Shown: piece by piece, positions 6,128 through 60,090 of the stretch
Layout of the letters: each line of letters starts with the position of its first letter
Position numbering within the stretch: position 1 is the stretch's first letter
IMG/VR virus record: IMGVR_UViG_3300043446_004613
Location: 62,001-126,000 of that record
DNA length: 64,000 nucleotides
Strand: one strand, 5' to 3'
Made by a program: the position numbers and the translations under genes
The notes under the pieces: model-generated
Seen by the model: only the letters and a program-made list of their open reading frames with translations
Databases searched by the model: none
Told to the model about the DNA's origin: nothing

Positions 6128-6393
6128 ACCTTACCGTCCAGTTTGGCCATCTGGATATAAAGCCCGGTCTTAGCTTCCGTGACACTGCTCAGTGTCACGG
6201 TTTCGCTTTTTAATACGGATGCGGCAAAGCCTTCTTCACGGACAGGCTCGCCGGAACTAAGAGCGTCGAGCGCGGTTTTGTACATCTTTGCCAGCAGCGG
6301 CGCAGTGGCCGCGCTGACGATACTGTGGTTGCGGACGGTAGCTTCCAGCGGCACAACGTGCTTTGGGTCGATATAGGTATAGCGTGCGAACAT
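6049..6393 (-). CDS. hypothetical protein (114 aa)
   Basis: ORF with GTTCTTAA motif 5 nt upstream. Confidence 0.6.
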   Translation of the reverse strand: MFARYTYIDPKHVVPLEATVRNHSIVSAATAPLLAKMYKTALDALSSGEPVREEGFAASVLKSETVTLSSVTEAKTGLYIQMAKLDGKVYMTVGQKWVMEQPNPAHGNVTTSMW

Positions 6394-6413
6394 GGTATTA
6401 AGAACAGAATATC

Positions 6414-6971
6414 TTAAAAATGACGTGCTCGGACAACCGTACGCTGCTCGCCTTCGTTACACCAGAACTTACGGGTGCGCCCGTCACCGATCATTGAATC
6501 ATCCTCCCAGAGCGCGTCGCATACAGCCTTGCCGATGTTGTCCCAGTCTGGCTTTTGACGGTGAAGGCTGCCAAGCATCTCAGCTTTTTTCTTTTTGCTC
6601 CATGACTCAGGCATGGCTATGTAGGCGATAACATCCACCGCGTACACATCAGCGGTCTGTAACCCGTTCGGCGCGGCCTCGCGCAGCCGGTCGCAGTAGT
6701 CACGATAGCGCAGCACCACGTCACGTTTCATCCAGCGGTCGCGCTGGGTCATGCGCGGCTTTCCCATCGGATCACCAACGGAGGTGAATTCAGTGGTTTT
6801 TGCACCCTCTGGTTCAGGTACATCAGAACTTAGCGGCGGTGAACAGTATTTCGGTTCAACCTTAACATTTTCAGTTGCTTGTTCTTTGGATTTAATGTTT
6901 ACTCCAACCAGACTGTTTACTTTTGGATGCTTTGCTAGTTGCTTTTCTAGTTGTGCTTGTGTCCATCCCAT
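6414..6971 (-). CDS. rusA: RusA-family Holliday junction resolvase
   Basis: KPDWDNIGKAVCDAL...DDSMI catalytic motif; GKPRMTQRD N-terminal motif of phage RusA. Confidence 0.85.
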   Translation of the reverse strand: MGWTQAQLEKQLAKHPKVNSLVGVNIKSKEQATENVKVEPKYCSPPLSSDVPEPEGAKTTEFTSVGDPMGKPRMTQRDRWMKRDVVLRYRDYCDRLREAAPNGLQTADVYAVDVIAYIAMPESWSKKKKAEMLGSLHRQKPDWDNIGKAVCDALWEDDSMIGDGRTRKFWCNEGEQRTVVRARHF

Positions 6972-7002
6972 ACAGTTCTAAGAACCGTATTTATTACACA
7001 TT

Positions 7003-8247
7003 ATGCCATATACCGATCCTAATGTTCTGACGGTACTGCAAAAGTACCGTGTTGCTGATGAGCAGGGCAACCTGCGCATGTCACCTATACGCCGTAATCG
7101 GCCAAACGCGCAGCCCGTACCAGTGCTCTCCGCTGACGTTATCGACAAGCTGGTTGCTTCTGATCCTACGCCCGATAAACGCTGGCTCGACTGGATTTTC
7201 TACCAAGCGGGCGGCGGTGACACTGCTAAAAACATGGCGAAGCAGGCACTTGATTCGATCAAACAGCGTTTCATCGATGAGCGCGTTAACGGCTGGACTC
7301 AACCTGTAACTGGTCAGTATCAAAATCCTGTTCCTCGTGCGGAAGCGGTCGCCCGTTGGGAACGTGCCGAACCTAAGTTTCGCGACGTGCTTTTGGTGAG
7401 TGACGAAGACACGGTAAAGAAGCTAAGAACCTTCGGCTTTTATCGCGAATGGCCCGGCAACGCAAATGTATACGCAAACGTGGTCGATGCCATGAACGCA
7501 TACATGAAAGTTTTCAAGCTTTTGGAAAAGATGAACACCGAGCTTGTGCGCGAAGGCGGCGAGCAGCTGCCGACAACACCGGATGGAATTCCAACATTCA
7601 GTCGCATGAAGGAAATCGCGCAGAAGGTTGAGCGCTACTACGCTTCCAAGAAAGCTCGCTCGGACATCCGCGAACAGACGATCTACGACGACGATGTCAT
7701 CACTGCCTTGGCTCCGTTGACGTATGCAGCTGCCGTCAAGTACGGCTATGATCAGTGGCCGTGGGCAAGCCGCAAGGGCTTTGAAGCTGTATTGGCAGGC
7801 GATCCCGGTAACTGGCGTACTCGCGATGAGTGGAAAGCAAACACCAGTCGCGGTACGGCGATCGTTTACCTGACTTTCCATACGCCGGTACCGGCTTGGA
7901 TTGTCCGTCGCGACGGCGCATGGGATGTGAAAGACCTGACGGACTTAGCTCTGCATCTGGAACCGTCCGACGCCAAAGAAAATCCTGATACTTGGCAGGT
8001 TTATGACCAAGAAAACCAGAACACGCGCACGCTTGCTCAAATCAAGCAGATGATCCTCAGCGAGCCTACCCGCACAGACGCGGAAGAGGATGAAGTGCCG
8101 ATCAAGCGTGGTGCAAATGTATACAAGACAACCGAAGAAGCGCAGCATGTCGTTAACAGCCTTGACCGTGCGGTTAACGCTGTTCAGAAATGGCTGGCTA
8201 AGTTCGACATGAAAGCGGTCAAATCGGACGTGTTCACTCTCGATTGA
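7003..8247 (+). CDS. hypothetical protein, paralog 1 (DPTPDKRWL motif)
   Basis: 414 aa; colinear similarity to the next gene. Confidence 0.8.
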   Translation: MPYTDPNVLTVLQKYRVADEQGNLRMSPIRRNRPNAQPVPVLSADVIDKLVASDPTPDKRWLDWIFYQAGGGDTAKNMAKQALDSIKQRFIDERVNGWTQPVTGQYQNPVPRAEAVARWERAEPKFRDVLLVSDEDTVKKLRTFGFYREWPGNANVYANVVDAMNAYMKVFKLLEKMNTELVREGGEQLPTTPDGIPTFSRMKEIAQKVERYYASKKARSDIREQTIYDDDVITALAPLTYAAAVKYGYDQWPWASRKGFEAVLAGDPGNWRTRDEWKANTSRGTAIVYLTFHTPVPAWIVRRDGAWDVKDLTDLALHLEPSDAKENPDTWQVYDQENQNTRTLAQIKQMILSEPTRTDAEEDEVPIKRGANVYKTTEEAQHVVNSLDRAVNAVQKWLAKFDMKAVKSDVFTLD

Positions 8248-8248
8248 T

Positions 8249-10191: not shown

Positions 10192-10194
10192 AAG

Positions 10195-11852: not shown

Positions 11853-11853
11853 G

Positions 11854-12438: not shown

Positions 12439-12451
12439 ACGTTAAATACGA

Positions 12452-16560: not shown

Positions 16561-16623
16561 GCGTGACAAAGAACGGCGTTTTGTAAACACGTACGACGTA
16601 AATCTGCGCCGGTATGTAAGGAT

Positions 16624-17290: not shown

Positions 17291-17306
17291 TTTGGTTCTT
17301 ACCGGC

Positions 17307-17534
17307 ATGGCTATAAATTTCAAGGCTCATGCCGAAAACTTACGCACGCTGGCTGATGGAGCGTCTAGGCTCGATCGGCAGAACTGCAACAATCTGCACT
17401 TAGTGGCCGATGTTCTAAACCGCATCGATCACCTTAAACAACAGCTTACGAACTGTAATGCGGACGATGATGACGACGTCACCCGCACAGCAAAAGAGCT
17501 TATGGCCGTGCTTGGAATCCAGCCCGGTAGTTAA
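17307..17534 (+). CDS. hypothetical protein
   Basis: ORF with GTTCTTA 5 nt upstream. Confidence 0.55.
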   Translation: MAINFKAHAENLRTLADGASRLDRQNCNNLHLVADVLNRIDHLKQQLTNCNADDDDDVTRTAKELMAVLGIQPGS

Positions 17535-20134: not shown

Positions 20135-20941
20135 TCACGGAAGTCTTCCAAACATCAACTCTTTGGGAATAGCTGTCGGCCCCTCGATATTACGGAACGC
20201 ACTTCCCGGCAATGATCGATTCTGCGGATAGCTGTAATCTCCAATCTGCACGAATAGCTGAGGGAAAAGATCACGATCAGTGTCAACGCTCTCGCCGAAT
20301 TGGCACGCTTCGCGGTATAGGCGATGACCGTACTTATGCGCCAGATTGGTCAGCATTGCTTGTTCACAGCGGTGCTCGTGAAAGCCTTCAACCTCCGGTG
20401 CCAGCACACTCGGATCAAACGTGTTGCAGCGAATGTCGAGCACGTAATGCTGCCACTCTGCAAGAAATGGTATGTGATCCTTTGTGAACGCCATGAAACG
20501 CGCAACAGCGTGCTGCTGGTCGTAGTATTTCGGCTCATCCTGCCCCATTAAGATGTAGCAGTCGCGTTTGCACCAGCGGCGCTGCCAGCAGCCGACTGCG
20601 GAAAACAGCATGATGCGCTCCCGTTCCGCTGTGTCGTAGATTACGGATAGATCGTGGATCGGATGAGTATCTCCGTCGACAAAAAGCACAACCGCATCCG
20701 GGTTGCGGAAGAGCGCGTCCATGATAACAAACGGTTTCCAGCTGAACCAGCCGTAGCCGCGAGTTTTTGGATGTGTAAAAAGCGGGTTAGCTTTAGCCAT
20801 GAACTCGGGACACGCAGTAGAGAGCCAGTGGTCATCGTAAACAGTAACTTGCTCGGCACCGAATTTTGGTGCGTTCTGAACGGCAAGACTTGTTGGGTTA
20901 TGGTAGCGCTGGCCGCTGAAAGTAATATAAATGCGTTTCAT
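20135..20941 (-). CDS. glycosyltransferase-like protein
   Basis: RGYGWFSWKPFVI, LFVDGD (DxD), HRCEQAMLT motifs. Confidence 0.65.
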   Translation of the reverse strand: MKRIYITFSGQRYHNPTSLAVQNAPKFGAEQVTVYDDHWLSTACPEFMAKANPLFTHPKTRGYGWFSWKPFVIMDALFRNPDAVVLFVDGDTHPIHDLSVIYDTAERERIMLFSAVGCWQRRWCKRDCYILMGQDEPKYYDQQHAVARFMAFTKDHIPFLAEWQHYVLDIRCNTFDPSVLAPEVEGFHEHRCEQAMLTNLAHKYGHRLYREACQFGESVDTDRDLFPQLFVQIGDYSYPQNRSLPGSAFRNIEGPTAIPKELMFGRLP

Positions 20942-21534
20942 CGTGACATAATTACATTCTCGGCGTTTTGTCCGATGGGACGAAAACCGTACTGTTCTGC
21001 AATTTGGCGCATCTCGTTGACATGCCCGTCATGCTCCACGCAGATTACACGTGTGGCGGTAAGCTGCGTCCACGGTAAAGCGCGGAACAAGTCGATGTTA
21101 ATGCTCTCGACGTCAATGTTTATGAATTCGTGTTGTGTACCGAATGATTCAAACAGCACCCCAAGCGGCATCGTGTATACCCAGTGCTTATTGAAGCGGA
21201 TGGTTGAACCAGCTTCCCATTTATCTTTATGCGCCGCGCTGACGCTTGATACGCCGTCACCGTTGCTATCATACCACGGACAGAGTGTTCCAGCAGTCCC
21301 CGGCGTTATGGCGGCATTGACGAGGGAGATTTTCGGGTTGTCCTTATGCAGTTCAGCCAAGCGGACAAAGACGCACGGTGATGGTTCAACGCATACCCCA
21401 GACCAGCCTAATTCGACCAAACGGTAAGTGTTGCTTAAAGCCTTGCCGTCAAACGCGCCAATGTCGAGAAAGCTGCCGGTGATACCTTCCAGTGCTTTGG
21501 TGATGATCTGCTCTTCGTTATTTTGTGAGTACAT
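20938..21534 (-). CDS. FkbM-family methyltransferase
   Basis: YSQNNEE, FLDIGAFDG..SNT, GVCVEP, FINIDVE. Confidence 0.85.
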   Translation of the reverse strand: MYSQNNEEQIITKALEGITGSFLDIGAFDGKALSNTYRLVELGWSGVCVEPSPCVFVRLAELHKDNPKISLVNAAITPGTAGTLCPWYDSNGDGVSSVSAAHKDKWEAGSTIRFNKHWVYTMPLGVLFESFGTQHEFINIDVESINIDLFRALPWTQLTATRVICVEHDGHVNEMRQIAEQYGFRPIGQNAENVIMSR

Positions 21535-21569
21535 GTTAAAAAGAACTTACTTTTTATTAAATTTTTATG

Positions 21570-21598
21570 TTTACGTTTGTTGTGCTACTGTCTACACT
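21570..21598 (+). promoter_or_regulatory. sigma70-type promoter, predicted leaderless transcript
   Basis: TTTACG-17 nt-TACACT; GTG start 6 nt after the -10 box. Confidence 0.55.
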
Positions 21599-25570: not shown

Positions 25571-26701
25571 ATGGATATGAGCGAAGAAAACTTAGACAGC
25601 TTTGATGTTGTTGTACCGGAAATTCCATTACCGGTAGCAGCAGAAACCGCAGACATTAAAGATGAATTCGAGGGCGGTTTCAAATTCGCTTTTATTGGCA
25701 GCGGCCAAGGCGGCGGGCGACTGGCACATACTTTCTGGAAGCTCGGCTACCGTCGCGTTTGCGCCGTCAACACCGCGTCGCAGGACTTGGCAACCTTGCC
25801 GTTGCCGGAGGCCAACAAGCTGTGTCTCGGCGATGCAGGCGGCGCAGGCAAGAATCCAGCGGTGGCCAAAGCCACGTTCAAAGAGCGCAAAGAGGACGTT
25901 CTCGATTTCATGCGTCGCTCATTCGGCCCCGGACTCGATCGCGTATTTGTCTGCGTTGGTGCGGGCGGAGGAACTGGCGCGGGTACGGCAGTGCAGCTTG
26001 TAGACACAGCCGTCGAACTTCAGAAATCGCTCAAGTGCAAGAGCGACAAGGTCGGCGTCATCGTAGCGCTGCCCAAGCTGGCCGAAGGCAAGAAGGTAGC
26101 CGCTAATGCGTACAACACGCTGAACGATCTTCTGTTCCTTGTTGAAAAGGAGGTCGTATCACCGTTGATTGTGGTTGATAACGAGAAGATTGGAACACTC
26201 TATCCGAATCTCGCTGTTGATCCATTTTGGGATACATCGAATACGAGCGTGTGCTCCCTGTTCCATCTGTTCAATACGATCTGCGTCAAAAACAGCAGCT
26301 ACACCAGTTTCGATCGCGCTGACTTGCTGACGGTACTCGACAGCGGCTTAATCACTTTTGGAGCCAATCCGGTTACTTCGTACAGCAGTGAAACGGACAT
26401 CAGCTATGCTGTTCGTAACAATCTGCGTAAGAACATTCTTACCGGCGGCATTGACCTCGCTACCGGGGACATTGCAGCCGCTGTGGTTATCGGCGGTGCC
26501 GAGATCATGAACTCAATGCCGCAGGCATATATCGAGCACGCGTTTGACCAGCTGAACCGCATGCTCAAAGCAGGCAGCACTGTTCATCGCGGCATCTACA
26601 AGGGCAACAAGAATAACCTAGTCGTGTATACGATGGTAGGCGGTTTGGCGAAGCCGAAAGAGAAACTGGCTGATCTCAAGCGTGTTGGCGACCTGATTTA
26701 G
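25571..26701 (+). CDS. tubulin/FtsZ-family GTPase (phage PhuZ/TubZ-like candidate)
   Basis: GSGQGGG, AVNT, GAGGGTGAG signature loop, VDNE, SFDRAD T7-like loop; no FtsZ C-terminal tail. Confidence 0.9.
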   Translation: MDMSEENLDSFDVVVPEIPLPVAAETADIKDEFEGGFKFAFIGSGQGGGRLAHTFWKLGYRRVCAVNTASQDLATLPLPEANKLCLGDAGGAGKNPAVAKATFKERKEDVLDFMRRSFGPGLDRVFVCVGAGGGTGAGTAVQLVDTAVELQKSLKCKSDKVGVIVALPKLAEGKKVAANAYNTLNDLLFLVEKEVVSPLIVVDNEKIGTLYPNLAVDPFWDTSNTSVCSLFHLFNTICVKNSSYTSFDRADLLTVLDSGLITFGANPVTSYSSETDISYAVRNNLRKNILTGGIDLATGDIAAAVVIGGAEIMNSMPQAYIEHAFDQLNRMLKAGSTVHRGIYKGNKNNLVVYTMVGGLAKPKEKLADLKRVGDLI

Positions 26702-26712
26702 TTCTTGAGGGA

Positions 26713-35380: not shown

Positions 35381-35410
35381 CGAATCAAAAGAACGGTGTT
35401 CTTAAAAAAT

Positions 35411-36481
35411 ATGGAACGTGAATCACAAAGTATACCGCTACCATGCTTCGGCATGGAGCATAATAGCAGCGATCCGCAGTGTTTAAGCTGTAAGCATGAA
35501 GCCGATTGCCGCATATTCATGGGTGCTCGCGCAGATAAAGTGACGCTGGATCAGGTAAAGTTCGACTTGATCTCAGACAAGTACCCAAAAGAAATATTTA
35601 ATGTTGACGACCCTGACAAGGTGCGACTGCAAACACTATACTGTAATTGTTACGCTACGGTATTTGACGGAGTAGTCCCCGATAAAAACGACAATGCTGA
35701 GCGCTTTAGTGCAAAGATATTAGCCAACGCCAACGCTGCTGATTGTTCACTTCGCATGTTCATGCTGTCAAACATGATAGCTCACGAGACACACGAAAAA
35801 CAGGTTATCAAGCATACGGAGAAACTGCGAGCGTCACGCTTTACGGCACGTTCGCTCACAAGCGCGTACGCCATAAAACGGGCGCAGATGTATCAACAGA
35901 TGTGCCGTGACCGCTTTGGCGTATTCAGTGTTAAAAGCTTGGCGGCATTGTCGGATGATAAGGAAACCATGACCGACACTGAACAGCTGATGCTGCAAAA
36001 TGAAGTCATGGCCGGTACGTGGATGGTGCGCCACAAGATATTTAACAGCGGCCCGAGCGAAAGACTGATGTTTGACACCCTTGAATTCCAACTGAGCCAT
36101 GAATGGTTGGCACTGGAATCATCTTACACGCGCTACGTGCTCACGCCGATGCGCCTCGGCGAGCTTAAAAGCACCAAGGTACAGGAGTATCGGCGCAAAG
36201 AAGTACTCGACCTTATCGGTTTTTTGAAGCGTAACCCGAGCAAAGGCCGCTGGTATTGGACGACGCGTCAGGCTATCATGGCAAAAGCTGTGACGCAGGT
36301 GCTCGCAAAATTTAATCTGCAACCGTGCGATTTCATGTATAGTCGCGAACCTGTCACAGACGTGATGAGTTTTTGGCGCACGCTGGGCCTGACAGTCCGG
36401 CACTACCACTGCCTGTTGTACCTGAACGGCGAAAACAATTTATTTACGCCGCGTCACCTTCGCTGGGAACACCGTTCTTAA
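35411..36481 (+). CDS. hypothetical protein with N-terminal Cys cluster, replication-associated
   Basis: PCFG...DPQCLSCKHEADC; directly upstream of helicase. Confidence 0.7.
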   Translation: MERESQSIPLPCFGMEHNSSDPQCLSCKHEADCRIFMGARADKVTLDQVKFDLISDKYPKEIFNVDDPDKVRLQTLYCNCYATVFDGVVPDKNDNAERFSAKILANANAADCSLRMFMLSNMIAHETHEKQVIKHTEKLRASRFTARSLTSAYAIKRAQMYQQMCRDRFGVFSVKSLAALSDDKETMTDTEQLMLQNEVMAGTWMVRHKIFNSGPSERLMFDTLEFQLSHEWLALESSYTRYVLTPMRLGELKSTKVQEYRRKEVLDLIGFLKRNPSKGRWYWTTRQAIMAKAVTQVLAKFNLQPCDFMYSREPVTDVMSFWRTLGLTVRHYHCLLYLNGENNLFTPRHLRWEHRS

Positions 36482-37934: not shown

Positions 37935-37963
37935 TTGACTGTATACATTTGTGTGCGTACAGT
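37935..37963 (+). promoter_or_regulatory. sigma70-type promoter for the tRNA/ncRNA/tmRNA cluster
   Basis: TTGACT-17 nt-TACAGT ending 5 nt before the tRNA. Confidence 0.8.
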
Positions 37964-37968: not shown

Positions 37969-38045
37969 CGCGGGGTGGAGCAGCCCGGTAGCTCGTCTGG
38001 CTCATAACCAGAAGGTCGTTGGTTCAAATCCAACCTCCGCAACCA
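37969..38045 (+). tRNA. tRNA-fMet (CAT), initiator type
   Basis: Full cloverleaf, C1:A72 mismatch, anticodon loop CTCATAA, encoded CCA. Confidence 0.95.
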
Positions 38046-38234: not shown

Positions 38235-38652
38235 GGGCGCGTACTGGTTTCGACTTTGATCGTAGCGGTGACGCCGACATGCCGAGGATGATGGTTGGCC
38301 TCGTAAAACAAACCGTCAAAAGTTAAATGCTGAAGAAGCTGAACTGAACAGCCTCCTCGCGGAAGCCGAAAGCATTTTCAACAATGCTGACGAAGTTCTC
38401 GCGAACGCTGAAGCTGTGGCGGCCTAACGGCCACCACCCGTTTACCGATCGATGCCTGCTGAATCGAGTAAACGCCATTAGCAGGACAGTGTGGATGCCG
38501 AGCAACGTCGGCGTTGGCCCGTGCCAGCCTATGGCGCAACCGGCAGGGTTTTCAGTTGTCGCTCTGATCCTGCCGCACAAAAGCGAAGAAGCATGTGAAT
38601 GGTGCAGTGTTACGGACATAGGACAGGGGTTCAACTCCCCTCGCGTCCACCA
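38235..38652 (+). ncRNA. ssrA: transfer-messenger RNA (tmRNA)
   Basis: 5' GGGCGCGTACTGGTTTCGAC; 3' GGGGTTCAACTCCCCTCGCGTCCACCA; G3-U wobble; pk1 CGAGG/CCTCGTAAA; tag ORF 38329-38427 ending AVAA*. Confidence 0.95.
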
Positions 38653-39962: not shown

Positions 39963-40473
39963 CGTCGTATTCGCTTTCGTCCGCATCTCCACGCTCCGTG
40001 CGCGGTGTGTTGTCGGCACCTTGAGCACTATTCTCTGCGTGGGTTAAAACCCGGATATTCCAGATGTGGTAGCCTTCATTCCAGTCTTTACGGTCGATTG
40101 TAAGGTCATCTGGTTGATTGCCGCGCTTGGCTAAATAACCCGTATCTGTGCAGAATTTAATGAATTGTTCAAGGGTTAGTGTAAAAGGCAGATTCCGTTT
40201 ACGAGCGCTGTGCCTGAGCATATTCAGCACGTACGTCGCAGGATGTCGCTCTTTAAGACGGCGAGAACGACACTTCCAGCAATGCTCCAGCATATAGCCG
40301 TTAGAGTTAACGGCTCGCGCATTACGGCACCACTTAGACGCGCACTTGTCCTCTTTGCTTCGCGCTTTGGGTGCCTGCTTCCACTTTTTACGGTTACGTC
40401 GGCGCACGCAGGTTAAGAACGGATTAAGTATTTTTTGATTACGGTTGAAAAAGCGTTTACAAATAAGTTGCAC
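39931..40473 (-). CDS. HNH-like phage protein
   Basis: LTLEQF...LTIDRKD..EGY...NIRVLT..ENS pattern; N-terminal Cys pairs. Confidence 0.55.
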   Translation of the reverse strand: MQLICKRFFNRNQKILNPFLTCVRRRNRKKWKQAPKARSKEDKCASKWCRNARAVNSNGYMLEHCWKCRSRRLKERHPATYVLNMLRHSARKRNLPFTLTLEQFIKFCTDTGYLAKRGNQPDDLTIDRKDWNEGYHIWNIRVLTHAENSAQGADNTPRTERGDADESEYDAKPVPDDQPF

Positions 40474-41684: not shown

Positions 41685-42224
41685 ATGACCGCACCGAAAG
41701 GAACAAATCTTAAAGCTGTTGCGATCGCCGCCAAACTGCTTGAAAACGAAGACCTGTCGTTTACGAACCAGTACCGTGGAGGCGATGGCACAGGTGGTCT
41801 TATTCTCTGGGGTGGCTCGCCATCTGACCCTGATGGTGATCCAGAAGGTACCATTCTTATCGAGTGGGGCGTTGAGATCGAAGCACGTAGCTGGGGCATA
41901 AAGGACATCGTGCCGTTCATCAAGCGCATCGTGCTGGATGGATACTGGAACATCTATCAGGAAACAGGCCCGGATGTTGAGAGCGAAGAGCGCTTTCATT
42001 ACGAATACCCGGAGACACCGGAAGCAAAGCCTACGGTTAAAGCAACAGCAGGCTCTGTAGACGTCGATACAGCTAATCCCGAGGATGTTGAACGCTTGGC
42101 ACAGCCACCAAAATGGAAGCTGGAATATGGTATCGACCGCTATCGCGACAACGATAACCGTACCACGTTCATTCCAAAAGCGGATGTTAATCTGACCACC
42201 CGAACGATTGAAATCACGTTCTAA
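41685..42224 (+). CDS. acidic hypothetical protein with AAKLLE leader
   Basis: AVAIAAKLLENED. Confidence 0.7.
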   Translation: MTAPKGTNLKAVAIAAKLLENEDLSFTNQYRGGDGTGGLILWGGSPSDPDGDPEGTILIEWGVEIEARSWGIKDIVPFIKRIVLDGYWNIYQETGPDVESEERFHYEYPETPEAKPTVKATAGSVDVDTANPEDVERLAQPPKWKLEYGIDRYRDNDNRTTFIPKADVNLTTRTIEITF

Positions 42225-43292: not shown

Positions 43293-43323
43293 GAACGGCA
43301 ACCTTCGGGTTGCCGTTCTTTTT
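43293..43323 (+). terminator. Rho-independent terminator
   Basis: GAACGGCAACC-TTCG-GGTTGCCGTTC-TTTTT. Confidence 0.85.
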
Positions 43324-43628: not shown

Positions 43629-43669
43629 AATGTCAGCGTAAAAATTACAAAAACCTGTTCTTAGTACAC

Positions 43670-44775: not shown

Positions 44776-45546
44776 ATGGTATCAGGCCCGAGCAGTAACG
44801 GCAGTCAGCCGGTCAGCACGAGTGCGCAGAGTCCCGATCTGCTCCCGCTGACCGGCTACTCTATTGATCAACTGAAGAACTACATCATGCGCCAGCTTGG
44901 CGCTCCGACGTGGAACGTTGAGTTGACCAATCAACAGATCATTGATTGCATCCAAGATGCGCTCGGCCTGTATTCTCAGTGGGTGCCGAACATAAAAGTC
45001 GGCAATCTCTTGCTGACACGCGGCCAGTTCAAATACCTCGTAAACGAAAACGTAGGGCTGGGCGTCGCTCGGGTTGACTTTGTCGAACCTAACCCAGTAC
45101 CCACGGAAATCTTCTATGGTAACCTGATCAATCCTGCGCCGCTCTTTCGTACCGGCTTGGACGAGTACGATGTGTTTCTGCGCTGGCGTAAGACGTGGCA
45201 GCGTGTCACGTCAATCAAGCCAGACTGGTTTTATGACGAGATGGAGCACGCGCTTTACATCCATAACCCGATTGAGCGTTATCAGGCTGGCATATTCTGC
45301 TACTGGCCACACGAGAAGACCGAAAAGCTGAATTACACAGGTGCTGACTGGGTCAAGCGCTTTGCACTGGCCCGCTCCAAGTTGTTGCTTGCAGAGACGT
45401 GGATGAAATTTTCCGGCGCTATTCCCGGCCCCGGTCAAAACATCCAACTGGATCAGCAACGGCGTGAGTCTGCGCAGAGCGAAATCGATAAGCTGATGGA
45501 ACAGCTAAAGGGCATGCAATTAAGCACGCCAATCATGGTCGATTAG
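44776..45546 (+). CDS. neck/head-completion protein (T4 gp13-like)
   Basis: LKNYIMRQLGAP..NVEL...QI.DCI.DAL..Y; WVKRFALA..K; KFSG.IPG. Confidence 0.75.
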   Translation: MVSGPSSNGSQPVSTSAQSPDLLPLTGYSIDQLKNYIMRQLGAPTWNVELTNQQIIDCIQDALGLYSQWVPNIKVGNLLLTRGQFKYLVNENVGLGVARVDFVEPNPVPTEIFYGNLINPAPLFRTGLDEYDVFLRWRKTWQRVTSIKPDWFYDEMEHALYIHNPIERYQAGIFCYWPHEKTEKLNYTGADWVKRFALARSKLLLAETWMKFSGAIPGPGQNIQLDQQRRESAQSEIDKLMEQLKGMQLSTPIMVD

Positions 45547-46321
45547 TTGAAAAATGTGCCCGGACAGTTTTGCGGATGTTATTTGCCAGCGTACTGGCTC
45601 TTTTGTCATCATTTTTCGGTGTAGCCTCAATGAAACCTTTTATCTGCTTGAACGATGCGCTAGGCACGTGCGCGGCGCACAGTGTGCCTAGACCCATCGT
45701 TCGATCGCAGTTATCGAGTGTCAGCATCACAGGTGTTCCTACTGCCACACACGGTAAGGCGACGTGAAGCCGAGAGGTTATTACGCAGCGTGCGGCAGCG
45801 TAACGGCGTAAACGTTTCAATGCCTGCCATTCGCGGCGACCAACAGGTGCGTTAGGATCGACTTCGACGTCGGCGTAGACTAGCGGCAGACCGGCACAGG
45901 GCGGAATGTCCACCGCCAGCACTTCTTCAGTTTTAGGCACATCAGGTCGATTTAAGGTCAGTGTCACGCAGCCAGCAAAGTAAGCTTCGATACCGCAGGC
46001 TTCAAAAATGGCAGCGGTTGATGTATCACGCGTATACACCGGTTTTCCGTAGCTATTCCAGTAATCACGGTGTTTATCGACAAGCTCACGTTTAGCGATG
46101 TGCACGCCGACAAACAGCGGATTATAGTTGGGATGCGGCGGCCAGTCCCATGCGTTGTGCTTGTACCATCCTGCAACAACGACGTTTGTGCCGGGTGGCA
46201 CGCAGTATCCGAGGTGCTCGCGATCGACTTCCAAGTCGACGCCGGGCATCATGTTGCGCACGGCAAGTGCCTGCATATCGTCGCCGTTGTTCGTAGTTGA
46301 GCAAACAATTAACGCGTTCAT
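45533..46321 (-). CDS. polysaccharide pyruvyl transferase-family protein
   Basis: NNGDDMQ, RD..T, FAGCVTLTL, ITSRLHVALPC.A.GTP. Confidence 0.8.
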   Translation of the reverse strand: MNALIVCSTTNNGDDMQALAVRNMMPGVDLEVDREHLGYCVPPGTNVVVAGWYKHNAWDWPPHPNYNPLFVGVHIAKRELVDKHRDYWNSYGKPVYTRDTSTAAIFEACGIEAYFAGCVTLTLNRPDVPKTEEVLAVDIPPCAGLPLVYADVEVDPNAPVGRREWQALKRLRRYAAARCVITSRLHVALPCVAVGTPVMLTLDNCDRTMGLGTLCAAHVPSASFKQIKGFIEATPKNDDKRASTLANNIRKTVRAHFSTNRP

Positions 46322-46336
46322 GCTAGAAAGAACAAT

Positions 46337-46915
46337 ATGTCTAAAGTCATTTGTGTTGGTAATCCTAAAACAGCAACAACAAGTTTACAGCGGGCTATGG
46401 AATTGCTTGGTTACTCTGTAATGGGTTGGAATGACTACGCTGTGCAGTCTTGGATTTCTGGGCAAGATGAGTTGTGCCTGAGCTTGGCAAAACCATACGG
46501 ATTTTTGAAGGATTGGCCTTGGCGCACGTACTACAGAGTGTTTGATAAAGCATATCCCGGCAGTAAGTTTATCCTTACTACGCGAAATGTAGACGCTTGG
46601 GTTGACAGCTTGATTCGCCATCTAGCCTACCATAAATCGACACCTTGGGCAGAACAAGCTCGTATCAAAGGTTATGGCTTTGACCCCCGTAAGCACGTCA
46701 ACGACAAAGCGTTTCTCATCGACTACTACGAGGCAAAAAACGCCGAAATAAGAAACTACTTTATCTCCAGACCTGATGACCTTCTGGAGCATGACTTTAC
46801 GATTGATCCAACATGGGAAGCGCTATGCGGTTTTCTCAAGAAACCGGTTCCATTAAAAGCGTTTCCAAAATTAAACGTAAATCCGCTTAAAAGTGAAAAT
46901 GTTCAACGTACTTAG
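46337..46915 (+). CDS. sulfotransferase-family protein 1
   Basis: VICVGNPKTATTSL (5'-PSB loop), DWPW, KFILTTR..DAW..S, WEALCGFL. Confidence 0.82.
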   Translation: MSKVICVGNPKTATTSLQRAMELLGYSVMGWNDYAVQSWISGQDELCLSLAKPYGFLKDWPWRTYYRVFDKAYPGSKFILTTRNVDAWVDSLIRHLAYHKSTPWAEQARIKGYGFDPRKHVNDKAFLIDYYEAKNAEIRNYFISRPDDLLEHDFTIDPTWEALCGFLKKPVPLKAFPKLNVNPLKSENVQRT

Positions 46916-48910: not shown

Positions 48911-48938
48911 TTGACGCTTGGCTTATCGTGTATACACT
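48911..48938 (+). promoter_or_regulatory. sigma70-type early promoter, predicted leaderless transcript
   Basis: TTGACG-16 nt-TACACT with AT-rich UP region; ATG 6 nt after the -10 box. Confidence 0.65.
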
Positions 48939-51485: not shown

Positions 51486-53003
51486 TTATTCAAAGGTTTC
51501 TTTGCTGTGCTGTTCAATCAATGCGATAAGCTCAGCCAGCGGAGTATTATCGCGGGGATACCACGTCTTTTGTTTACCCGTCAGCTTCTTTTTAAGCTCA
51601 TCGCTGGGTTCGCAAAAACGAAGTTTCATCGGAGCTTCACTGTCGAGACAGAACAGAAAACAACGTTTACGCTCCGCCCCTACGTAGTGATACCAAAACT
51701 GACGACCTTGGCGTTCAGCACGGTTAAATGTCTCATCGAGGTGACTGATGATTTCTGCCTCATCGTTGCTGGTAATCCGCTGACTGGGTTCGTTGGTAGG
51801 CCGGGGCAGGTAGGCAGGCGTGCGCTGCTGGCGGGCACCCAGCAGCTTAGGGCTGATTGCCATCTTTGATAGCCCAAGATTTGCGGCTTCGACAGAGCAG
51901 GAGTGACGCAAGTCACAGGTGTTGCATTGGCGAGCGTTCTTGGAGTACAGGATGCCATAGCAGGCGAGTTTTCCGTTTCCGATCGAACGCGGAACCTTGG
52001 CGTTAACCTCAGTCAACATCTCGGCAACTTGTGGCGACACCTTGTCAAATTGATCACGGGCCGCCATCGTGAGCATGCGGCGTACGACCATACCGTCAAG
52101 GTCAGTTGGAATCTGTAGTCCGAAGACAAGTTTAAGCTGTGCGATGATTGCGTTTTGACGGGCTTCGCCGTCGTGTTGTTCTTGAGTTACCATACGATGC
52201 GCTAGAGTTTTGTTACGTATTGATAGAACAGCTTCTGAAAATAGTTCGGTCGAAATTCCGACAGCTTCCGCCATGTGCGTGAATTTTATTTTTACCGTCA
52301 CCTTTCCCTTGTTGCCTTTGCGCATCGCGTCCAATTCGGCATAGCAGCGTGCGTGCGCACTAGGGCTAATTAGTTCGTGAAAAACAAGCTTCTCTACAGG
52401 CGTAAGTTGGAAAGCAAACTCAGCCGCTGTTTGGCTAAATCCCCAATCAATGTCGTTTTCGTCGCATCCACTGTCTACGTCGTGCATGTCCGGCACTTGC
52501 AGTCCCAAATCAGGGTCGTCAAGTGATAGGTCAACGTTCTTGTGATACTCTGGCGTTTCCTCGCTGTCATGCGCAGCTTTAGGCGCGTCTAGTTTTTGCT
52601 GTTGACGCGGCGGCGGTTTTTGACCAGTGCGCTTTTCCGTAAAGCGGTATTTCTGAACACGGCTTTTGGTGTTGTTGTTTACACTTGTCTTGAAAAAGGC
52701 AAAAAACGAGTGACGAGTCGGACACTTATCGCCGCCCATGATGCCCTTGCTGATAAGTTTGCTGAGCACAAGGTTGCCTTCACCCATCAGTTCGTCAAAC
52801 TGAAGGTGCGGCGTAGTCTCGTCGCGGTATTGGTTAGCCACAGTGGCGATGACACGCTGTAGATCAGGCATCATCTCTTCCAACACCGGAGGTCTAAGCT
52901 TCGGGTCTTTGAAGATTAGGAATAAACGTTGACGCTTTGGGCGCAGTGCGCCAAGGATGTCACTCGTTAGCCGAATCTTCGTTGAAAATGCTGTGCTCGC
53001 CAT
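51486..53003 (-). CDS. sigma-factor-like protein with C-terminal Zn-binding extension
   Basis: Region 2-like LQRVIATVANQY...FDELMGEGNLVL...FFAFFK; HTH-like MAEAVGIS; CYG...CNTC...C. Confidence 0.55.
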   Translation of the reverse strand: MASTAFSTKIRLTSDILGALRPKRQRLFLIFKDPKLRPPVLEEMMPDLQRVIATVANQYRDETTPHLQFDELMGEGNLVLSKLISKGIMGGDKCPTRHSFFAFFKTSVNNNTKSRVQKYRFTEKRTGQKPPPRQQQKLDAPKAAHDSEETPEYHKNVDLSLDDPDLGLQVPDMHDVDSGCDENDIDWGFSQTAAEFAFQLTPVEKLVFHELISPSAHARCYAELDAMRKGNKGKVTVKIKFTHMAEAVGISTELFSEAVLSIRNKTLAHRMVTQEQHDGEARQNAIIAQLKLVFGLQIPTDLDGMVVRRMLTMAARDQFDKVSPQVAEMLTEVNAKVPRSIGNGKLACYGILYSKNARQCNTCDLRHSCSVEAANLGLSKMAISPKLLGARQQRTPAYLPRPTNEPSQRITSNDEAEIISHLDETFNRAERQGRQFWYHYVGAERKRCFLFCLDSEAPMKLRFCEPSDELKKKLTGKQKTWYPRDNTPLAELIALIEQHSKETFE

Positions 53004-53970
53004 AACGCCGTGGGTCGATAGTCTCGATCATCTCGTTGTACGTTTCTTGTGCTGAACGTACAGTTTTCTTGTGTTTGCGGGCGACCTCTGCGATCGAATC
53101 AGGGTCTAAATCTGTCTTGTCGATGTCACGCATCAACAAGTAATCAGAATGGATTTTTGACAGCTGTTGGATGGTAGGAAACTTCATCCGTTTGCCTCCG
53201 AACAGCACGCACAGCTTTTTAGCAACTTCAAACCCGAACTCATCTACAATATCGGGCAGATACGTGTAGCTTTGAGAAGCCAGCACAAGATCGTATTCTG
53301 TAAACGGGACGTAAGTTTGTTTATAGAAGGCTTGGCGCAAATTCACGATTGACCAGTCGTAAAAGAATTTGGATAAGTCGAAACTGATACCGTAGGCATA
53401 AGCTGCGCTGCGAATTGCGTCCTGCTTATCGTGCTCGTCGTCTATGATACACTGGATCAAGAAGCGGATAGCGCCAATCTCCTGTGGATCGCCCCATCGA
53501 CAGTTTAGCTCTCTAAGCTTGTTGTGCGTTTCCTGTACGGCATCGTGCTTGTCGACTTCGTGATCATCAACGCCGTAAAACTTTTCAAGGTTATCGCTGG
53601 TGACGTGGAATCGACGCCGGTACTGATTTACTTTCTGTAGTTCAGAACGAAAAGCGTTTTTAGCGCATTTGCTAAACCAAGAAAACAACTTGCCCTTTTT
53701 AGGCTGCCACGCTGCCAGCCACTTGATGACTTTTTCCTGTGCAGCGCTGACCAGTTGTGGAAGATCGACCGTGTAATGAAAATCTTCAAACTGCGCTAAA
53801 CGCTCAAACATCGCCGAGGAGCCGACGACAATGTTTTCAAGCACGAGCATCGCATCTTTGTGGCGACCAGCCGCGTTCAGCTGCTTCCACTGGATAGCCA
53901 GCGGCGTCAGTTGACTTGCCGGAAATATATGCTCTCCGTCAGCGGGTGTTGCTGGATTCTTCTTTGGCAT
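52960..53970 (-). CDS. sigma region 2-like domain fused to Mor-like activator domain
   Basis: WQPKKGKLFSWFSKCAKNAF; LPDIVDEFGFEVAKKLCVLFGG.RMKFP; C-terminal HTH. Confidence 0.6.
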   Translation of the reverse strand: MPKKNPATPADGEHIFPASQLTPLAIQWKQLNAAGRHKDAMLVLENIVVGSSAMFERLAQFEDFHYTVDLPQLVSAAQEKVIKWLAAWQPKKGKLFSWFSKCAKNAFRSELQKVNQYRRRFHVTSDNLEKFYGVDDHEVDKHDAVQETHNKLRELNCRWGDPQEIGAIRFLIQCIIDDEHDKQDAIRSAAYAYGISFDLSKFFYDWSIVNLRQAFYKQTYVPFTEYDLVLASQSYTYLPDIVDEFGFEVAKKLCVLFGGKRMKFPTIQQLSKIHSDYLLMRDIDKTDLDPDSIAEVARKHKKTVRSAQETYNEMIETIDPRRYGEHSIFNEDSANE

Positions 53971-54661: not shown

Positions 54662-54692
54662 AAAGCGCAACTTGTTATTATGTTGTAAACAG

Positions 54693-54737
54693 TGGGAGAT
54701 CAAAAGTAAACATAAATCGTTATATTTTGATCTCCCA
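54693..54737. repeat. 13-bp perfect inverted repeat with 19-nt spacer (terminator or operator)
   Basis: TGGGAGATCAAAA...TTTTGATCTCCCA, intergenic. Confidence 0.7.
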
Positions 54738-54744
54738 TTTTGAT

Positions 54745-55554: not shown

Positions 55555-55557
55555 AGT

Positions 55558-56931: not shown

Positions 56932-56936
56932 AAGTT

Positions 56937-58343: not shown

Positions 58344-58369
58344 AATACTTTTTCTGGTCTTGTTTTTGT

Positions 58370-58840
58370 TTATTCAACTACATTTCTACGTTTGTCCGGT
58401 TCATGCTCCATGCGACGAGTCGCTTCAATAGAACGGAGAAGTTCCATTTTCGCTTCGATGGCCTTGATCGTGGCCGTTATCCAGTCGTAGTCTTTCTCAG
58501 CGCGAGCGTAAGCTTCCGACGCTGCCTTAACCTCTGGAGCAAGAGTAACTGCGCGTTCAAGCGCGGCTTCGGTCATCTTTTCGCCGAAGCCTTGACTCAT
58601 GAAGCCGCCGTTTTTAAGGTCGAAGTATGCCTTCGCTTCGGCTTCCTTGAGTTTATATTTATTGTTGATGACGCGTTCGTTGGCTTTACCTTTTTGGTAG
58701 CCAAACCATCCGATGTAGGACGGCAGCATGCCAGCCGCCTCGCCGATGTCTTCAAACGAAGCCTTCAACACGGCATCGATGTCGGCAGTCTGGCCGTCGA
58801 TGGTGAAGGACTTCAAAACCGGTATGGACTGTTTTCTCAT
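58370..58840 (-). CDS. UvsY-like recombination mediator (candidate)
   Basis: Helical protein with KMTEAALERAV...; clustered with RecA and SSB. Confidence 0.5.
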   Translation of the reverse strand: MRKQSIPVLKSFTIDGQTADIDAVLKASFEDIGEAAGMLPSYIGWFGYQKGKANERVINNKYKLKEAEAKAYFDLKNGGFMSQGFGEKMTEAALERAVTLAPEVKAASEAYARAEKDYDWITATIKAIEAKMELLRSIEATRRMEHEPDKRRNVVE

Positions 58841-60069
58841 GGTGTTGCCGGGTGAAAAGCATCCAACTGCTTTTGCGCTAATTCCATCAAGTCTACCTTC
58901 TTTAGAACGTCGTCAGGTGCAACTGCGGAGGTAACTTCGCAAGAATGTTGCCGGATACCTTGAGGGCACTTGTTTACAGGGAACTCGCCAAACGCAAAGC
59001 ACGGAGAGAATTGACAGGCATCCTGCTTCCAGACAGCTAAGTCCATGTAGTTTTTATCGTAACCGATGCGTGCGCCGGGAGCGTGTGTACCCCAGATGCT
59101 AACCGCAGGCGTGTTCAAAGCCTGCGCCATGTACAGCGGAGCGCTATCCAAACAGACTAATCCGGCTGAACGGGAGATCAGCGCCATGAGCACGCGGATC
59201 GACGTGCTGTCGATTGCGTTGATGACTCCGCCACCCAGCTGGGCTATACGTTGATTGAATTCGCCTGCGCTCATATCCATATCCGGCAGACGCAAAGAAC
59301 TGTTTCCTACAACCACAACCGGACGGCGTGTAGACATTTCTTTAATAATTTCCAACCACGTGCCGTAGTTCATGCTACGCAGGGTCGCGTTGCTGAAAGG
59401 TGCAACGACGTAGTAGCCAACATGCCGCAAGTCGACTTTACGCTGCTCCCAGACGTAACGGTAGAGTCGATCAAGGTTTTGATAGTCTTCAGAAATCAAG
59501 GTTGCCGTAGGGCGCTTCCACTTAGGATCAATACTTGCCGGATCAAAACCAAGCTGCTTAAACAGTGCATCATACACGTTCAGCTGGTCACCCTCACAGT
59601 CCTGCTCGGTGACCGTATTGATGAGCCAGTGGTAGTTGTACATGCGGAGATGGTCATACTCCAGCGGGCCGCATTTGACGCACTTGTTGCTGATGAGCGG
59701 GCTATGCGTCAACACTAATCCCCGATCTGCGAACGCCATGACGTCGATTTCAACGTCACCGCCCGATACGTGGTTGATGAAACCCAGCGGCCCGGTAAGG
59801 AACAACAGGTCACCTATGCCGCGCTCACGGCAACGCTCCACCAAAATCTTAGCGCCGGTCACGTTTTTACCAGCGGTAAGCCGGTTATAGAGCGAAGCCC
59901 CATCCAGTTCGGATACGGTATCAATGAAGTCCTTGATCGGTTCAATGCGGTTTGCGTTTACAACGTAGCGGCGGTTTGGATTGAACAGCCACGTTTCGTC
60001 AGCGGTCTGGTTAAACATCACCGGTTCCTTGACGGTTACTATCAGCCATTGCGTATTGATCGGAATCAT
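58837..60069 (-). CDS. GT9 (heptosyltransferase-like) glycosyltransferase
   Basis: RGIGDLLF; LDSAPLYMAQALNTPAVSIWG. Confidence 0.8.
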   Translation of the reverse strand: MIPINTQWLIVTVKEPVMFNQTADETWLFNPNRRYVVNANRIEPIKDFIDTVSELDGASLYNRLTAGKNVTGAKILVERCRERGIGDLLFLTGPLGFINHVSGGDVEIDVMAFADRGLVLTHSPLISNKCVKCGPLEYDHLRMYNYHWLINTVTEQDCEGDQLNVYDALFKQLGFDPASIDPKWKRPTATLISEDYQNLDRLYRYVWEQRKVDLRHVGYYVVAPFSNATLRSMNYGTWLEIIKEMSTRRPVVVVGNSSLRLPDMDMSAGEFNQRIAQLGGGVINAIDSTSIRVLMALISRSAGLVCLDSAPLYMAQALNTPAVSIWGTHAPGARIGYDKNYMDLAVWKQDACQFSPCFAFGEFPVNKCPQGIRQHSCEVTSAVAPDDVLKKVDLMELAQKQLDAFHPATP

Positions 60070-60090
60070 GCGTTGTAAAAGAACAGGGTT

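What the first reader, a model, noticed from the sequence alone, without database searches (positions are those of the whole stretch)
6393..60084. Second upstream motif GTTCTT(A/T) 5-8 nt before replication and enzyme genes
Seen before starts at 6393, 6971 (RusA), 16560 (DinG), 17307, 21534 (FkbM), 26713 (GT), 35380 (PolA), 35411, 36489 (helicase), 43329, 43670, 46321 and 60069 (GT9), with variants at 5708 and 61626/61653. It aligns with the first motif as GT-W-N-TT-W but marks a different gene set. Inference: a middle-phase promoter class read by a second phage sigma-like factor.
Basis: partly seen in the sequence, partly recalled or inferred. Interest (0 to 1): 0.7.

Follow-up and report, generated by a model that had tools for sequence, protein, structure and literature searches.

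The report
Phage promoter motif abutting start codons
GTTCTT(A/T) sits 5-8 bases before the start codons of the DNA-replication and sugar-transfer genes of an uncultured 211-kb freshwater phage, and is most likely the core of a promoter class that starts messenger RNAs at or next to the start codon; what reads it is unknown.

Summary
In the window, 13 of 26 GTTCTTW copies lie 5-8 nt before an ATG/GTG that opens an ORF; unrelated permutations of the same letters give 0-3. Genome-wide, 33 genes carry GTTCT[TA]. The core extends to about 14 bp, roughly A-n-A-W-n-C-Y-GTTCTT-W.

It is a separate class from GTANTTA: no intermediate words occur at gene starts. Its annotated genes are replication or recombination genes, while GTANTTA genes are virion genes (Fisher p=0.005). 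All 19 orthologue pairs that carry a strict motif in both genomes keep their class.

The phage barely uses Shine-Dalgarno sites. It also has about 13 canonical sigma70-type promoters whose -10 box lies about 6 nt before the ATG. This implies leaderless mRNAs and puts both motifs where a -10 box would sit.

Best reading: GTTCTTW is the core of a -35-less promoter for replication-phase ("middle") leaderless genes.

No transcript 5' ends were available, so this is inferred. The "second sigma-like factor" is not supported. Only one sigma70-family gene was found (window 52963-53970), and which class it reads is open.

The parts
6399..6405 (-). Class B core GTTCTTA, 5 nt before ATG 6393 (114-aa ORF, no family match)
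   Evidence: no PHROG or Pfam match
6979..6985 (-). Class B core GTTCTTA (part of the palindrome GTTCTTAGAAC), 7 nt before ATG 6971, RusA-like resolvase
   Evidence: kept in relative G001
16568..16574 (-). Class B core GTTCTTT, 7 nt before ATG 16560, DinG-type DNA helicase
   Evidence: kept in G001
17295..17301 (+). Class B core GTTCTTA, 5 nt before ATG 17307 (75-aa ORF)
21540..21546 (-). Class B core GTTCTTT, 5 nt before ATG 21534, FkbM-like methyltransferase (21.3 bits against a cut-off of 22.7)
26701..26707 (+). Class B variant GTTCTTG. Its G is the last base of the upstream tubulin gene's TAG stop. It lies 5 nt before ATG 26713, a nucleotide-diphospho-sugar transferase
35388..35394 (-). 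Class B core GTTCTTT, 7 nt before ATG 35380, family A DNA polymerase. One arm of AAGAAC-ACC-GTTCTT in a 30-nt divergent gap
   Evidence: the palindrome is identical in G001 while its flanks differ
35398..35404 (+). Class B core GTTCTTA, 6 nt before ATG 35411 (356-aa ORF, unknown). The other arm of the same divergent pair
36474..36480 (+). Class B core GTTCTTA, 8 nt before ATG 36489, DnaB-like helicase
   Evidence: kept in G001 and G004
40414..40420 (-).
42218..42224 (+). Class B variant GTTCTAA, 5 nt before ATG 42230, cell-wall hydrolase (Hydrolase_2)
43315..43321 (+). Class B core GTTCTTT, 7 nt before ATG 43329 (99 aa). GTTC is also the 3' arm of a terminator-like hairpin (11-bp stem GAACGGCAACC, loop TTCG) followed by a T run
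43657..43663 (+). Class B core GTTCTTA, 6 nt before ATG 43670 (364 aa, unknown)
46327..46333 (-). Class B core GTTCTTT, 5 nt before ATG 46321, polysaccharide pyruvyl transferase-like. The divergent gap is only 15 nt
60078..60084 (-). Class B core GTTCTTT, 8 nt before ATG 60069, GT9-like. It heads a co-directional run that includes the SSB and UvsX-like genes
1132..1138 (-). Class B variant GTTCTAT, 5 nt before ATG 1126 (78-aa ORF)
52963..53970 (-). The only detectable phage sigma70-family factor (336 aa). It is a candidate reader of class A, class B or both
   Evidence: PHROG 234 and 836; profile hits on sigma region 2 in PDB; AF2 model with pLDDT 87.8; the top 50 Foldseek PDB hits are all sigma factors; no paralogue
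48911..48938 (+). Example of the third (early, host-type) promoter class: TTGACG-N16-TACACT, then 6 nt, then ATG 48945
37935..37963 (+). Early-type promoter TTGACT-N17-TACAGT. The tRNA-Met 5' end (37969) lies 6 nt after the -10 box
17524..17530 (+). Example of class A (GTAGTTA), 4 nt before ATG 17538, baseplate wedge protein. Included for contrast

Best explanation
GTTCTT(A/T) is the invariant core of a roughly 14-bp, -35-less promoter element with the consensus A-n-A-W-n-C-Y-G-T-T-C-T-T-W. It lies where a -10 box would lie, 6-8 nt upstream of the start codon. Transcription would therefore begin at, or within a few nucleotides of, the A/G of the start codon and give leaderless mRNAs.

It is one of three promoter classes in this jumbo myophage:
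1. About 13 host-type promoters (AT-rich UP-like stretch, TTGACK, N17, TAYAnT, about 6 nt, ATG) before small unknown genes and an anti-CRISPR-like gene. These are presumably early.
2. GTTCTTW before replication, recombination and transferase genes. These are presumably middle.
3. GTA(G)TTA before virion genes. These are presumably late.

Shown: position, conservation, class separation, gene content, near-absence of Shine-Dalgarno sites, and presence of one phage sigma.

Inferred: that the motif acts in transcription, the position of the transcription start, and the timing.

It could be the single phage sigma, host RNA polymerase with an unrecognised early phage protein, or a factor with no detectable sigma similarity.
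For: 1. Position. 13 of 26 window copies and 23 of 65 genomic GTTCTTW copies are start-adjacent, against about 0.4 expected per word. GTTCTT-to-start spacing is 6-8 nt in 24 of the 30 start-adjacent copies.

2. Canonical -35/-10 promoters in the same genome put their -10 box 5-8 nt (median 6) before the ATG in 13 clean cases. One puts it 6 nt before the tRNA 5' end. So the place the motif occupies is the -10 place of a leaderless unit.

3. An SD-like 4-mer occurs in 1 of 76 motif genes and 20 of 197 other genes, against a background of 5.6%. Downstream genes in operons have neither an SD nor a motif, so translation here does not need the motif.

4. The base before the start codon is a pyrimidine in 65 of 76 motif genes (p=2e-10). 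This is the usual Y(-1)R(+1) context of a transcription start.

5. Divergent gene pairs are separated by only 15-32 nt, filled by two back-to-back motifs. Nothing else in those gaps is conserved.

6. There are two discrete classes with no intermediate words and different architecture.
- Class B genes: RusA, DinG-type helicase, PolA, DnaB, endonuclease VII, SbcC, SbcD.
- Class A genes: baseplate wedge, gp13-like adaptor, portal, tail fibre, tail chaperone.
- Fisher p=0.005.

7. Conservation. 12 of 12 orthologues in relative G001 (about 70% nt identity) keep their class while the flanks diverge. 7 of 7 informative orthologues in G004 and G005 do too. GTTCT[TA] followed by ATG recurs in most of 27 related IMG/VR loci with GC of 47-68%.

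8. Two terminator-like hairpins end right at the motif. The following gene therefore needs a promoter within about 20 nt.

9. A sigma70-family gene is present. No phage RNA polymerase gene was found.
Against: - No transcript 5' ends or kinetics exist. The only RNA run holds assembled contigs of about 85%-identical relatives.
- The position also fits an SD-like translation signal. 20 of 32 class B genes follow a co-directional gene, with a median gap of 20 nt, as ribosome sites do.
- GTTCTT lacks the A(-11) that sigma70-type -10 recognition relies on.
- First genes after a strand switch carry a recognised motif only slightly more often than internal genes (43% against 32%). My gene calls are crude, which weakens this test.
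- The major capsid gene has neither motif.
- 4 class B and 11 class A genes start with GTG. In E. coli such leaderless mRNAs translate poorly (my own knowledge). The host is unknown.
Confidence: 0.6

Rival explanations
1. The motif acts on the mRNA as a substitute ribosome-binding or translational-control signal. It would replace the missing Shine-Dalgarno sequence or bind a phage translational activator or repressor, with the two words defining two translational regulons.
For: The distance to the start codon (5-9 nt) is that of an SD. There are almost no canonical SD sites. Many motif genes sit 6-20 nt behind a co-directional gene.
Against: Two non-overlapping words cannot pair with one rRNA tail. 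197 genes have neither an SD nor a motif, so translation does not depend on the motif. Canonical -10 boxes occupy the same place. In 15-32-nt divergent gaps the mRNA would have to start inside the opposite gene. No phage bS21 gene was found.
Confidence: 0.15
2. It is a promoter class, but it is not read by a second sigma. The single phage sigma (window 52963-53970) reads both GTTCTTW and GTANTTA, and a co-factor or competition sets the timing. This is how phiEco32 gp36 reads both middle and late single-element promoters.
For: Only one sigma-family gene is detectable. Both words share G1, T2, T5, T6 and (A7) and occupy nearly the same place. The sigma gene lies behind an early-type promoter and inside a class B-headed run, so it could be made early. 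In 3 of about 20 relatives it has its own GTTCT[TA], which is compatible with self-amplification. The phiEco32 precedent is from PMC8948821.
Against: The two classes have different tolerance patterns, and only class B has an upstream extension. That fits two recognition modes better than one. The genome is 93% complete, and early proteins have no recognisable folds, so a second factor could be hidden.
Confidence: 0.3
3. GTTCT is a half-site of an operator for a dimeric phage DNA-binding protein (a repressor or activator) that overlaps promoters not recognised here.
For: Palindromes occur: GTTCTTAGAAC (6971), AAGAAC-ACC-GTTCTT (35380/35411) and GTTCT-GT-AGAAC (61626/61653), with similar ones in relatives. 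Three small helix-turn-helix proteins are encoded.
Against: Most class B sites are not palindromic. The clearest palindromes (35380/35411, 61626/61653, the L070 pair and 6971/7003) lie between divergent genes and are explained by two overlapping oriented sites. Orientation and distance to the start codon are strict.
Confidence: 0.08
4. It is an RNA-processing site where polycistronic transcripts are cut to release mRNAs with very short leaders.
For: Motifs occur inside tightly packed co-directional arrays.
Against: Motifs also occur in short divergent gaps and directly after terminator-like hairpins. A cleavage-site model does not by itself account for two function-specific classes.
Confidence: 0.04

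Closest known systems
The -10 motif adjacent to ORFs giving leaderless mRNA in Deinococcus-Thermus (PMC12340547), and Thermus phage phiYS40 middle/late promoters (Sevostyanova 2007, cited there; its content is from my own knowledge)
   Same: A short promoter element lies a few bp upstream of the start codon, there is no SD, and -35 dependence is weak or absent. This phage's own TTGACK/TAYAnT promoters follow exactly this geometry.
   Different: The class B word GTTCTT is not a TANNNT box. There are three discrete words split by gene function. The host is unknown, and no transcription starts have been mapped.
T4 late promoters (TATAAATA at -10, read by the sigma-like gp55 with gp33 and the clamp; my own knowledge)
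   Same: A single short element at -10 with no -35 box is placed before many individual genes, even inside co-directional arrays. The phage has T4-like modules (gp13-like, gp6-like, gp23-like, UvsX, gp32-like SSB, endonuclease VII) and a sigma with a weak match to the gp55 PHROG.
   Different: The closest analogue of T4 late promoters is class A, not class B. The sequences differ. T4 late mRNAs have leaders with SD sites. The sigma here is 336 aa with region 4-like helices, unlike gp55.
phiEco32 / phage 7-11: a phage sigma (gp36 / gp47) directing middle and late promoters (PMC8948821)
   Same: A phage-encoded sigma70-family protein redirects host core polymerase. In phiEco32 the promoters are single-element and come in temporal classes.
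   Different: Those are small podoviruses with unrelated motifs (7-11: GTAAtg-N16-aCTA) and no start-codon adjacency reported in the abstract read. There is no detectable homology beyond the sigma fold.
Bacillus phage SPO1 sigma cascade (gp28 middle, gp33/34 late; my own knowledge)
   Same: It follows early, middle and late logic with class-specific promoter words.
   Different: SPO1 promoters are bipartite (-35 and -10) with leaders. Two or three sigma genes are present there, and only one here.
Jumbo phages with mapped transcription starts: phiKZ (PMC8244752) and AR9 (PMC5312081)
   Same: They are jumbo phages with class-specific short promoter motifs.
   Different: Those phages use their own multisubunit polymerases. 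phiKZ showed no leaderless transcript and AR9 has 26-491-nt leaders. This phage has no polymerase gene and start-adjacent motifs.

Membership tests
Promoter for leaderless mRNA (-10 element adjacent to the ORF) | A conserved element at a fixed short distance (about 5-9 nt) upstream of the start codon | tested here: met
Promoter for leaderless mRNA (-10 element adjacent to the ORF) | The primary transcript 5' end lies at, or within a few nt of, the start codon | not testable with these tools
   No RNA reads of this phage exist, only contigs of relatives. Indirect support: Y(-1)R(+1) in 65 of 76 genes.
Promoter for leaderless mRNA (-10 element adjacent to the ORF) | No Shine-Dalgarno sequence between the element and the start | tested here: met
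   1 of 76 motif genes has an SD-like 4-mer, against a background of 5.6%
Housekeeping sigma70-type -10 box (TANNNT) | T(-12) A(-11) ... T(-7) consensus | tested here: not met
   The class B core is GTTCTT with invariant T at the second place. The genome's separate early class does meet the consensus.
T4-type late promoter | A single 8-bp TATAAATA element with no other conserved position | tested here: not met
   The word is different, and class B has conserved positions at -2, -5 and -7 from the core. Class A matches the 'single short element' architecture but not the sequence.
T4-type late promoter | A gp55-type sigma is encoded | tested here: inconclusive
   PHROG 234 'late sigma transcription factor' matches at E=0.003 over residues 60-154. 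The protein is a longer sigma with region 4-like helices.
Phage-sigma-dependent single-element promoter (phiEco32 type) | A phage-encoded sigma70-family protein | tested here: met
Phage-sigma-dependent single-element promoter (phiEco32 type) | No conserved -35 element | tested here: met
   Information is at most 0.33 bit at every position upstream of the roughly 14-bp element (-7 from the core); the largest values are an A-rich patch at -17 to -14
Phage-sigma-dependent single-element promoter (phiEco32 type) | The sigma holoenzyme initiates from the motif | not testable with these tools
   Needs in vitro transcription
Shine-Dalgarno-type ribosome-binding site | Complementarity to the conserved 16S rRNA 3' tail (CCUCC) | tested here: not met
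   GTTCTT and GTAGTTA contain no GGAG/GAGG/AGGA, and these 4-mers are not clearly enriched upstream of starts. The host rRNA is unknown.
T4 middle promoter (MotA box) | An activator box near -30 plus a sigma70 -10 box | tested here: not met
   No conserved box lies 20-30 nt upstream, and the core is not TANNNT

The most novel reading that the evidence does not exclude
A widespread lineage of uncultured 200-240-kb phages (GC 47-68%) expresses much of its genome as leaderless mRNAs. It uses three temporally ordered, start-codon-abutting promoter classes on host RNA polymerase. The replication-phase class (AnAWnCY-GTTCTTW) would be read by a specificity factor with no recognisable sigma similarity, or by one intein-prone phage sigma that switches between two unrelated -10-like words.
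Probability: 0.25. Interest if true: 0.75.

Novelty: new variant of a known kind. Interest (0 to 1): 0.55.

Why it matters
If transcription starts confirm it, this lineage would give a compact promoter code readable from sequence alone: three words, each fixing both the transcription start and the translation start. That would allow temporal classes to be assigned to hundreds of unknown genes in uncultured jumbo phages.

It would also be a jumbo phage using host RNA polymerase with largely leaderless expression. This contrasts with phiKZ (no leaderless transcripts) and AR9 (26-491-nt leaders).

Finally, it points to an unidentified reader of a -10-position word that lacks the canonical A(-11).

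Tried and rejected
- **GenBank phages:** no nucleotide match. The best PolA and capsid matches are 24-30% identical, so no annotated relative could be used.
- **RNA evidence:** DNA runs only for this phage. One soil metatranscriptome holds contigs of about 85%-identical relatives of the capsid gene. It gives no 5' ends or direction.
- **Second sigma or polymerase:**
  - Sigma70_r2 has no hit.
  - TIGR02937 gives only weak hits.
  - phmmer and a 41-sequence profile against all ORFs find no paralogue.
  - No T7-type polymerase was found, although that control rang nowhere.
  - No DFDGD catalytic motif exists in six frames.
  - Three small N-terminal HTH proteins hit sigma region 4 models but do not look like sigmas.
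- **Early proteins:** 9 of the 10 scanned have no Pfam family (the tenth has only a sub-threshold peptidase hit), and the gene upstream of the sigma has no usable Atlas hit.
- **Sigma gene as a class B gene:** only 3 of about 20 relatives have GTTCT[TA] before it, so its temporal class cannot be inferred.
- **Motif enrichment at first genes after strand switches:** weak (43% against 32%) and confounded by my crude ORF calls.
- **Other checks:** no phage bS21. A literature search for the motif words returned only primers.
- **One degenerate motif GTWNTTW:** rejected, because no intermediate words occur at starts.

Full report
**What the window is.** The window is bases 62001-126000 of a 211,113-bp IMG/VR virus contig. 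It comes from a freshwater metagenome and is estimated 93% complete. It is a T4-like-module myophage with:
- a gp23-type capsid protein, a gp13-like adaptor and a gp6-like baseplate wedge;
- UvsX, a gp32-like SSB, endonuclease VII and SbcCD;
- a family A DNA polymerase, DnaB, an NAD-dependent ligase and a TubZ-like tubulin;
- a tRNA-Met and a tmRNA.

Nothing in GenBank phages is close.

**Check of the observation.** Every listed site exists.
- GTTCTTW is only mildly over-represented overall: 26 copies against 16.2 +/- 4.0 in shuffles.
- 13 of the 26 copies lie 5-8 nt before an ATG/GTG that opens an ORF of at least 50 aa.
- The 29 other permutations of the same letters give at most 6, and that one is the shifted word TGTTCT. 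The rest give 0-3.
- Genome-wide, GTTCTTA is start-adjacent in 14 of 32 copies and GTTCTTT in 9 of 33, with about 0.4 expected. The 'first motif' GTAGTTA is start-adjacent in 30 of 47.
- With a crude ORF set I count 32 class B genes (GTTCT[TA]), or 33 with the FkbM-like gene that my ORF selection skipped. There are 44 class A genes (GTANTTA).
The 'variant' at 5708 is not at a start codon.

**Anatomy.** Aligned on the core, class B carries information upstream:
- C at -2 in 23 of 32 sites;
- A at -5 in 23 of 32;
- A at -7 in 18 of 32;
- a pyrimidine at -1 in 25 of 32 (T 15, C 10);
- an A-rich patch at -14 to -17.

The element is therefore about 14 bp, A-n-A-W-n-C-Y-GTTCTT-W. Class A has no information outside its 7-mer.

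A table of all GTNNT[TA][AT] words at starts is strictly bimodal. GTA-N-TTA and GTTC-T-W-W are used. GTTGTTA (0 of 19), GTTTTTA (0 of 45), GTGCTTA (0 of 29) and similar words are never start-adjacent. So the two motifs are separate classes, and the alignment as GT-W-N-TT-W is superficial.

**Gene sets.** Class B precedes:
- RusA, a DinG-type helicase, PolA, DnaB, endonuclease VII, SbcC and SbcD;
- GroES-like, cell-wall hydrolase and several transferase genes.

Class A precedes baseplate wedge, head-tail adaptor, portal, tail fibre and tail chaperone genes. It also precedes tubulin and a radical SAM gene. Comparing DNA metabolism with virion structure gives Fisher p=0.005. SSB and UvsX have no motif of their own. 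They lie in the co-directional run headed by the class B site at 60069.

**Conservation.**
- A 56.8-kb relative (G001) is syntenic, with about 68-72% nt identity. It keeps the same class at 12 of 12 orthologous starts while the flanks and spacers diverge. For example, the PolA/35411 palindrome AAGAAC-ACC-GTTCTT is identical and its flanks are not.
- In two complete, distant relatives (G004 and G005) the strict words survive at 7 orthologues, all in the same class.
- The words [CG]TAGTTA, GTTCTT/GTTCTA and start-adjacent TATAAT-like boxes are among the most enriched start-proximal 7-mers.
- GTTCT[TA] followed by ATG recurs across most of the 27 related IMG/VR loci, with GC of 47-68%.

**Why a promoter rather than a ribosome site.**
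1. The phage hardly uses Shine-Dalgarno sites. They occur in 1 of 76 motif genes and 20 of 197 others, against a background of 5.6%. Sixty-three of 136 motif-less co-directional genes overlap their upstream neighbour. Translation here therefore does not depend on an upstream word.
2. The genome has a third, canonical class: AT-rich TAAAATWTARTG, then TTGACK, N17, TAYAnT. In 13 clean cases it is followed after 5-8 nt (median 6) by an ATG that opens an ORF. Once it is followed by the tRNA 5' end. For such promoters the start point is predictable, and it falls on the start codon. That gives leaderless mRNAs. Class A and B words occupy the same place as these -10 boxes.
3. The base before the start codon is a pyrimidine in 65 of 76 motif genes.
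4. Divergent genes are 15-32 nt apart, with only the two back-to-back words between them.
5. Two discrete, function-specific words cannot both pair with one rRNA tail.
6. Two terminator-like hairpins end at a class B core.

None of this is a transcript 5' end, and I could not obtain one.

**What reads it.**
- No phage RNA polymerase gene was found.
- One sigma70-family protein is encoded at window 52963-53970(-):
  - weak PHROG matches to 'late sigma transcription factor' and a region 4-like HTH;
  - a 41-homologue profile whose best PDB hits are sigma region 2;
  - an AF2 model with pLDDT 87.8 whose top 50 Foldseek PDB hits are all sigma factors.
- It has no paralogue in the genome.
- It lies behind an early-type promoter that has a 20-nt leader, and within a class B-headed run.
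- In 3 of about 20 relatives it has its own GTTCT[TA].

So it may be made early or in the middle phase, and it could read class B, class A or both. The last option is the phiEco32 gp36 precedent (PMC8948821).

**Comparison with known systems.**
- The geometry matches the '-10 region adjacent to ORFs' mode of Deinococcus-Thermus (PMC12340547). It also matches Thermus phage phiYS40, which I cite from my own knowledge.
- The logic matches the T4, SPO1 and phiEco32 temporal promoter classes.
- It differs from mapped jumbo phages. phiKZ has no leaderless transcript (PMC8244752) and AR9 has 26-491-nt leaders (PMC5312081).
- The word itself lacks the A(-11) of sigma70-type -10 boxes.

I rate it a new variant of a known kind.

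**Limits.** Gene calls are my own greedy longest-ORF set, so some starts are wrong. The host is unknown. All functional statements about timing and transcription starts are inference.

Noticed in passing
window 2394-2422(-), 21570-21598(+), 37935-37963(+), 48911-48938(+), 54682-54710(-); about 13 clean sites genome-wide: There is a third, canonical promoter class: an AT-rich UP-like TAAAATWTARTG, then TTGACK, N17, TAYAnT. Its -10 box lies 5-8 nt (median 6) before an ATG, which implies leaderless early genes. The site at 54710 is a weaker match with a 20-nt leader.
   Followed up: yes
window 52963-53970(-): This is a divergent sigma70-family factor of 336 aa. Many homologues in relatives are 490-770 aa because an intein, with or without a LAGLIDADG endonuclease, is inserted at about residue 100 in sigma region 2, next to the invariant Cys102.
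   Followed up: partly
window 1315-2385(-): The first gene behind the early-type promoter at 2422 resembles the AcrVA2-like anti-CRISPR family in the ESM Atlas (feature score 0.98; TM 0.56-0.71 to AcrVA2-like clusters). It has no Pfam hit.
   Followed up: partly
window 37969-38045(+) and 38235-38652(+): A tRNA-Met and a full-length tmRNA (Rfam 127 bits) sit behind one early-type promoter. The tRNA starts CGCGGGG and ends ...CCGCAACCA. That is a C1xA72 mismatch like bacterial initiator tRNA (my reading). An initiator-like tRNA would be relevant to leaderless translation.
   Followed up: partly
whole genome G000: Shine-Dalgarno use is nearly absent: 21 of 273 genes have an SD-like 4-mer, against a background of 5.6%. 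Start/stop overlaps are very frequent (63 of 136 motif-less co-directional genes). The host is unidentified.
   Followed up: partly
window 25577-26698(+): A TubZ/PhuZ-like tubulin gene carries a class A (virion-type) motif. No phiKZ-type RNA polymerase gene was found in the genome.
   Followed up: no
window 20941-21534(-), 22442-23287(+), 26713-27468(+), 45536-46321(-), 46337-46912(+), 58840-60069(-), 60094-61626(-): There are many sugar or small-group transferase genes: FkbM-like methyltransferase, radical SAM, nucleotide-sugar transferase, pyruvyl transferase, sulfotransferase, GT9 and another glycosyltransferase. Most sit behind class B motifs. They may modify DNA or the cell surface.
   Followed up: no
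G000:C1:129216-130679 (outside the window; L031:1225-2688): The gp23-type major capsid gene has neither a class A nor a class B motif. It has a C/A-rich 37-nt spacer and is followed by the strongest terminator-like hairpin in the genome (stem of 11 bp ending at 130724), then an early-type promoter.
   Followed up: partly
L031 (capsid region), run X3: A soil metatranscriptome holds RNA contigs about 85% identical to the capsid gene. Relatives of this phage lineage are therefore transcriptionally active in soil.
   Followed up: partly
G000:C1:29067-29537(+), 203921-204472(+), 205712-206167(-): Three small proteins have an N-terminal HTH that hits sigma region 4 models. The first has a GTTCTAA motif before its start; another ends in a zinc-ribbon-like CxxC motif. 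They are possible transcription regulators.
   Followed up: partly
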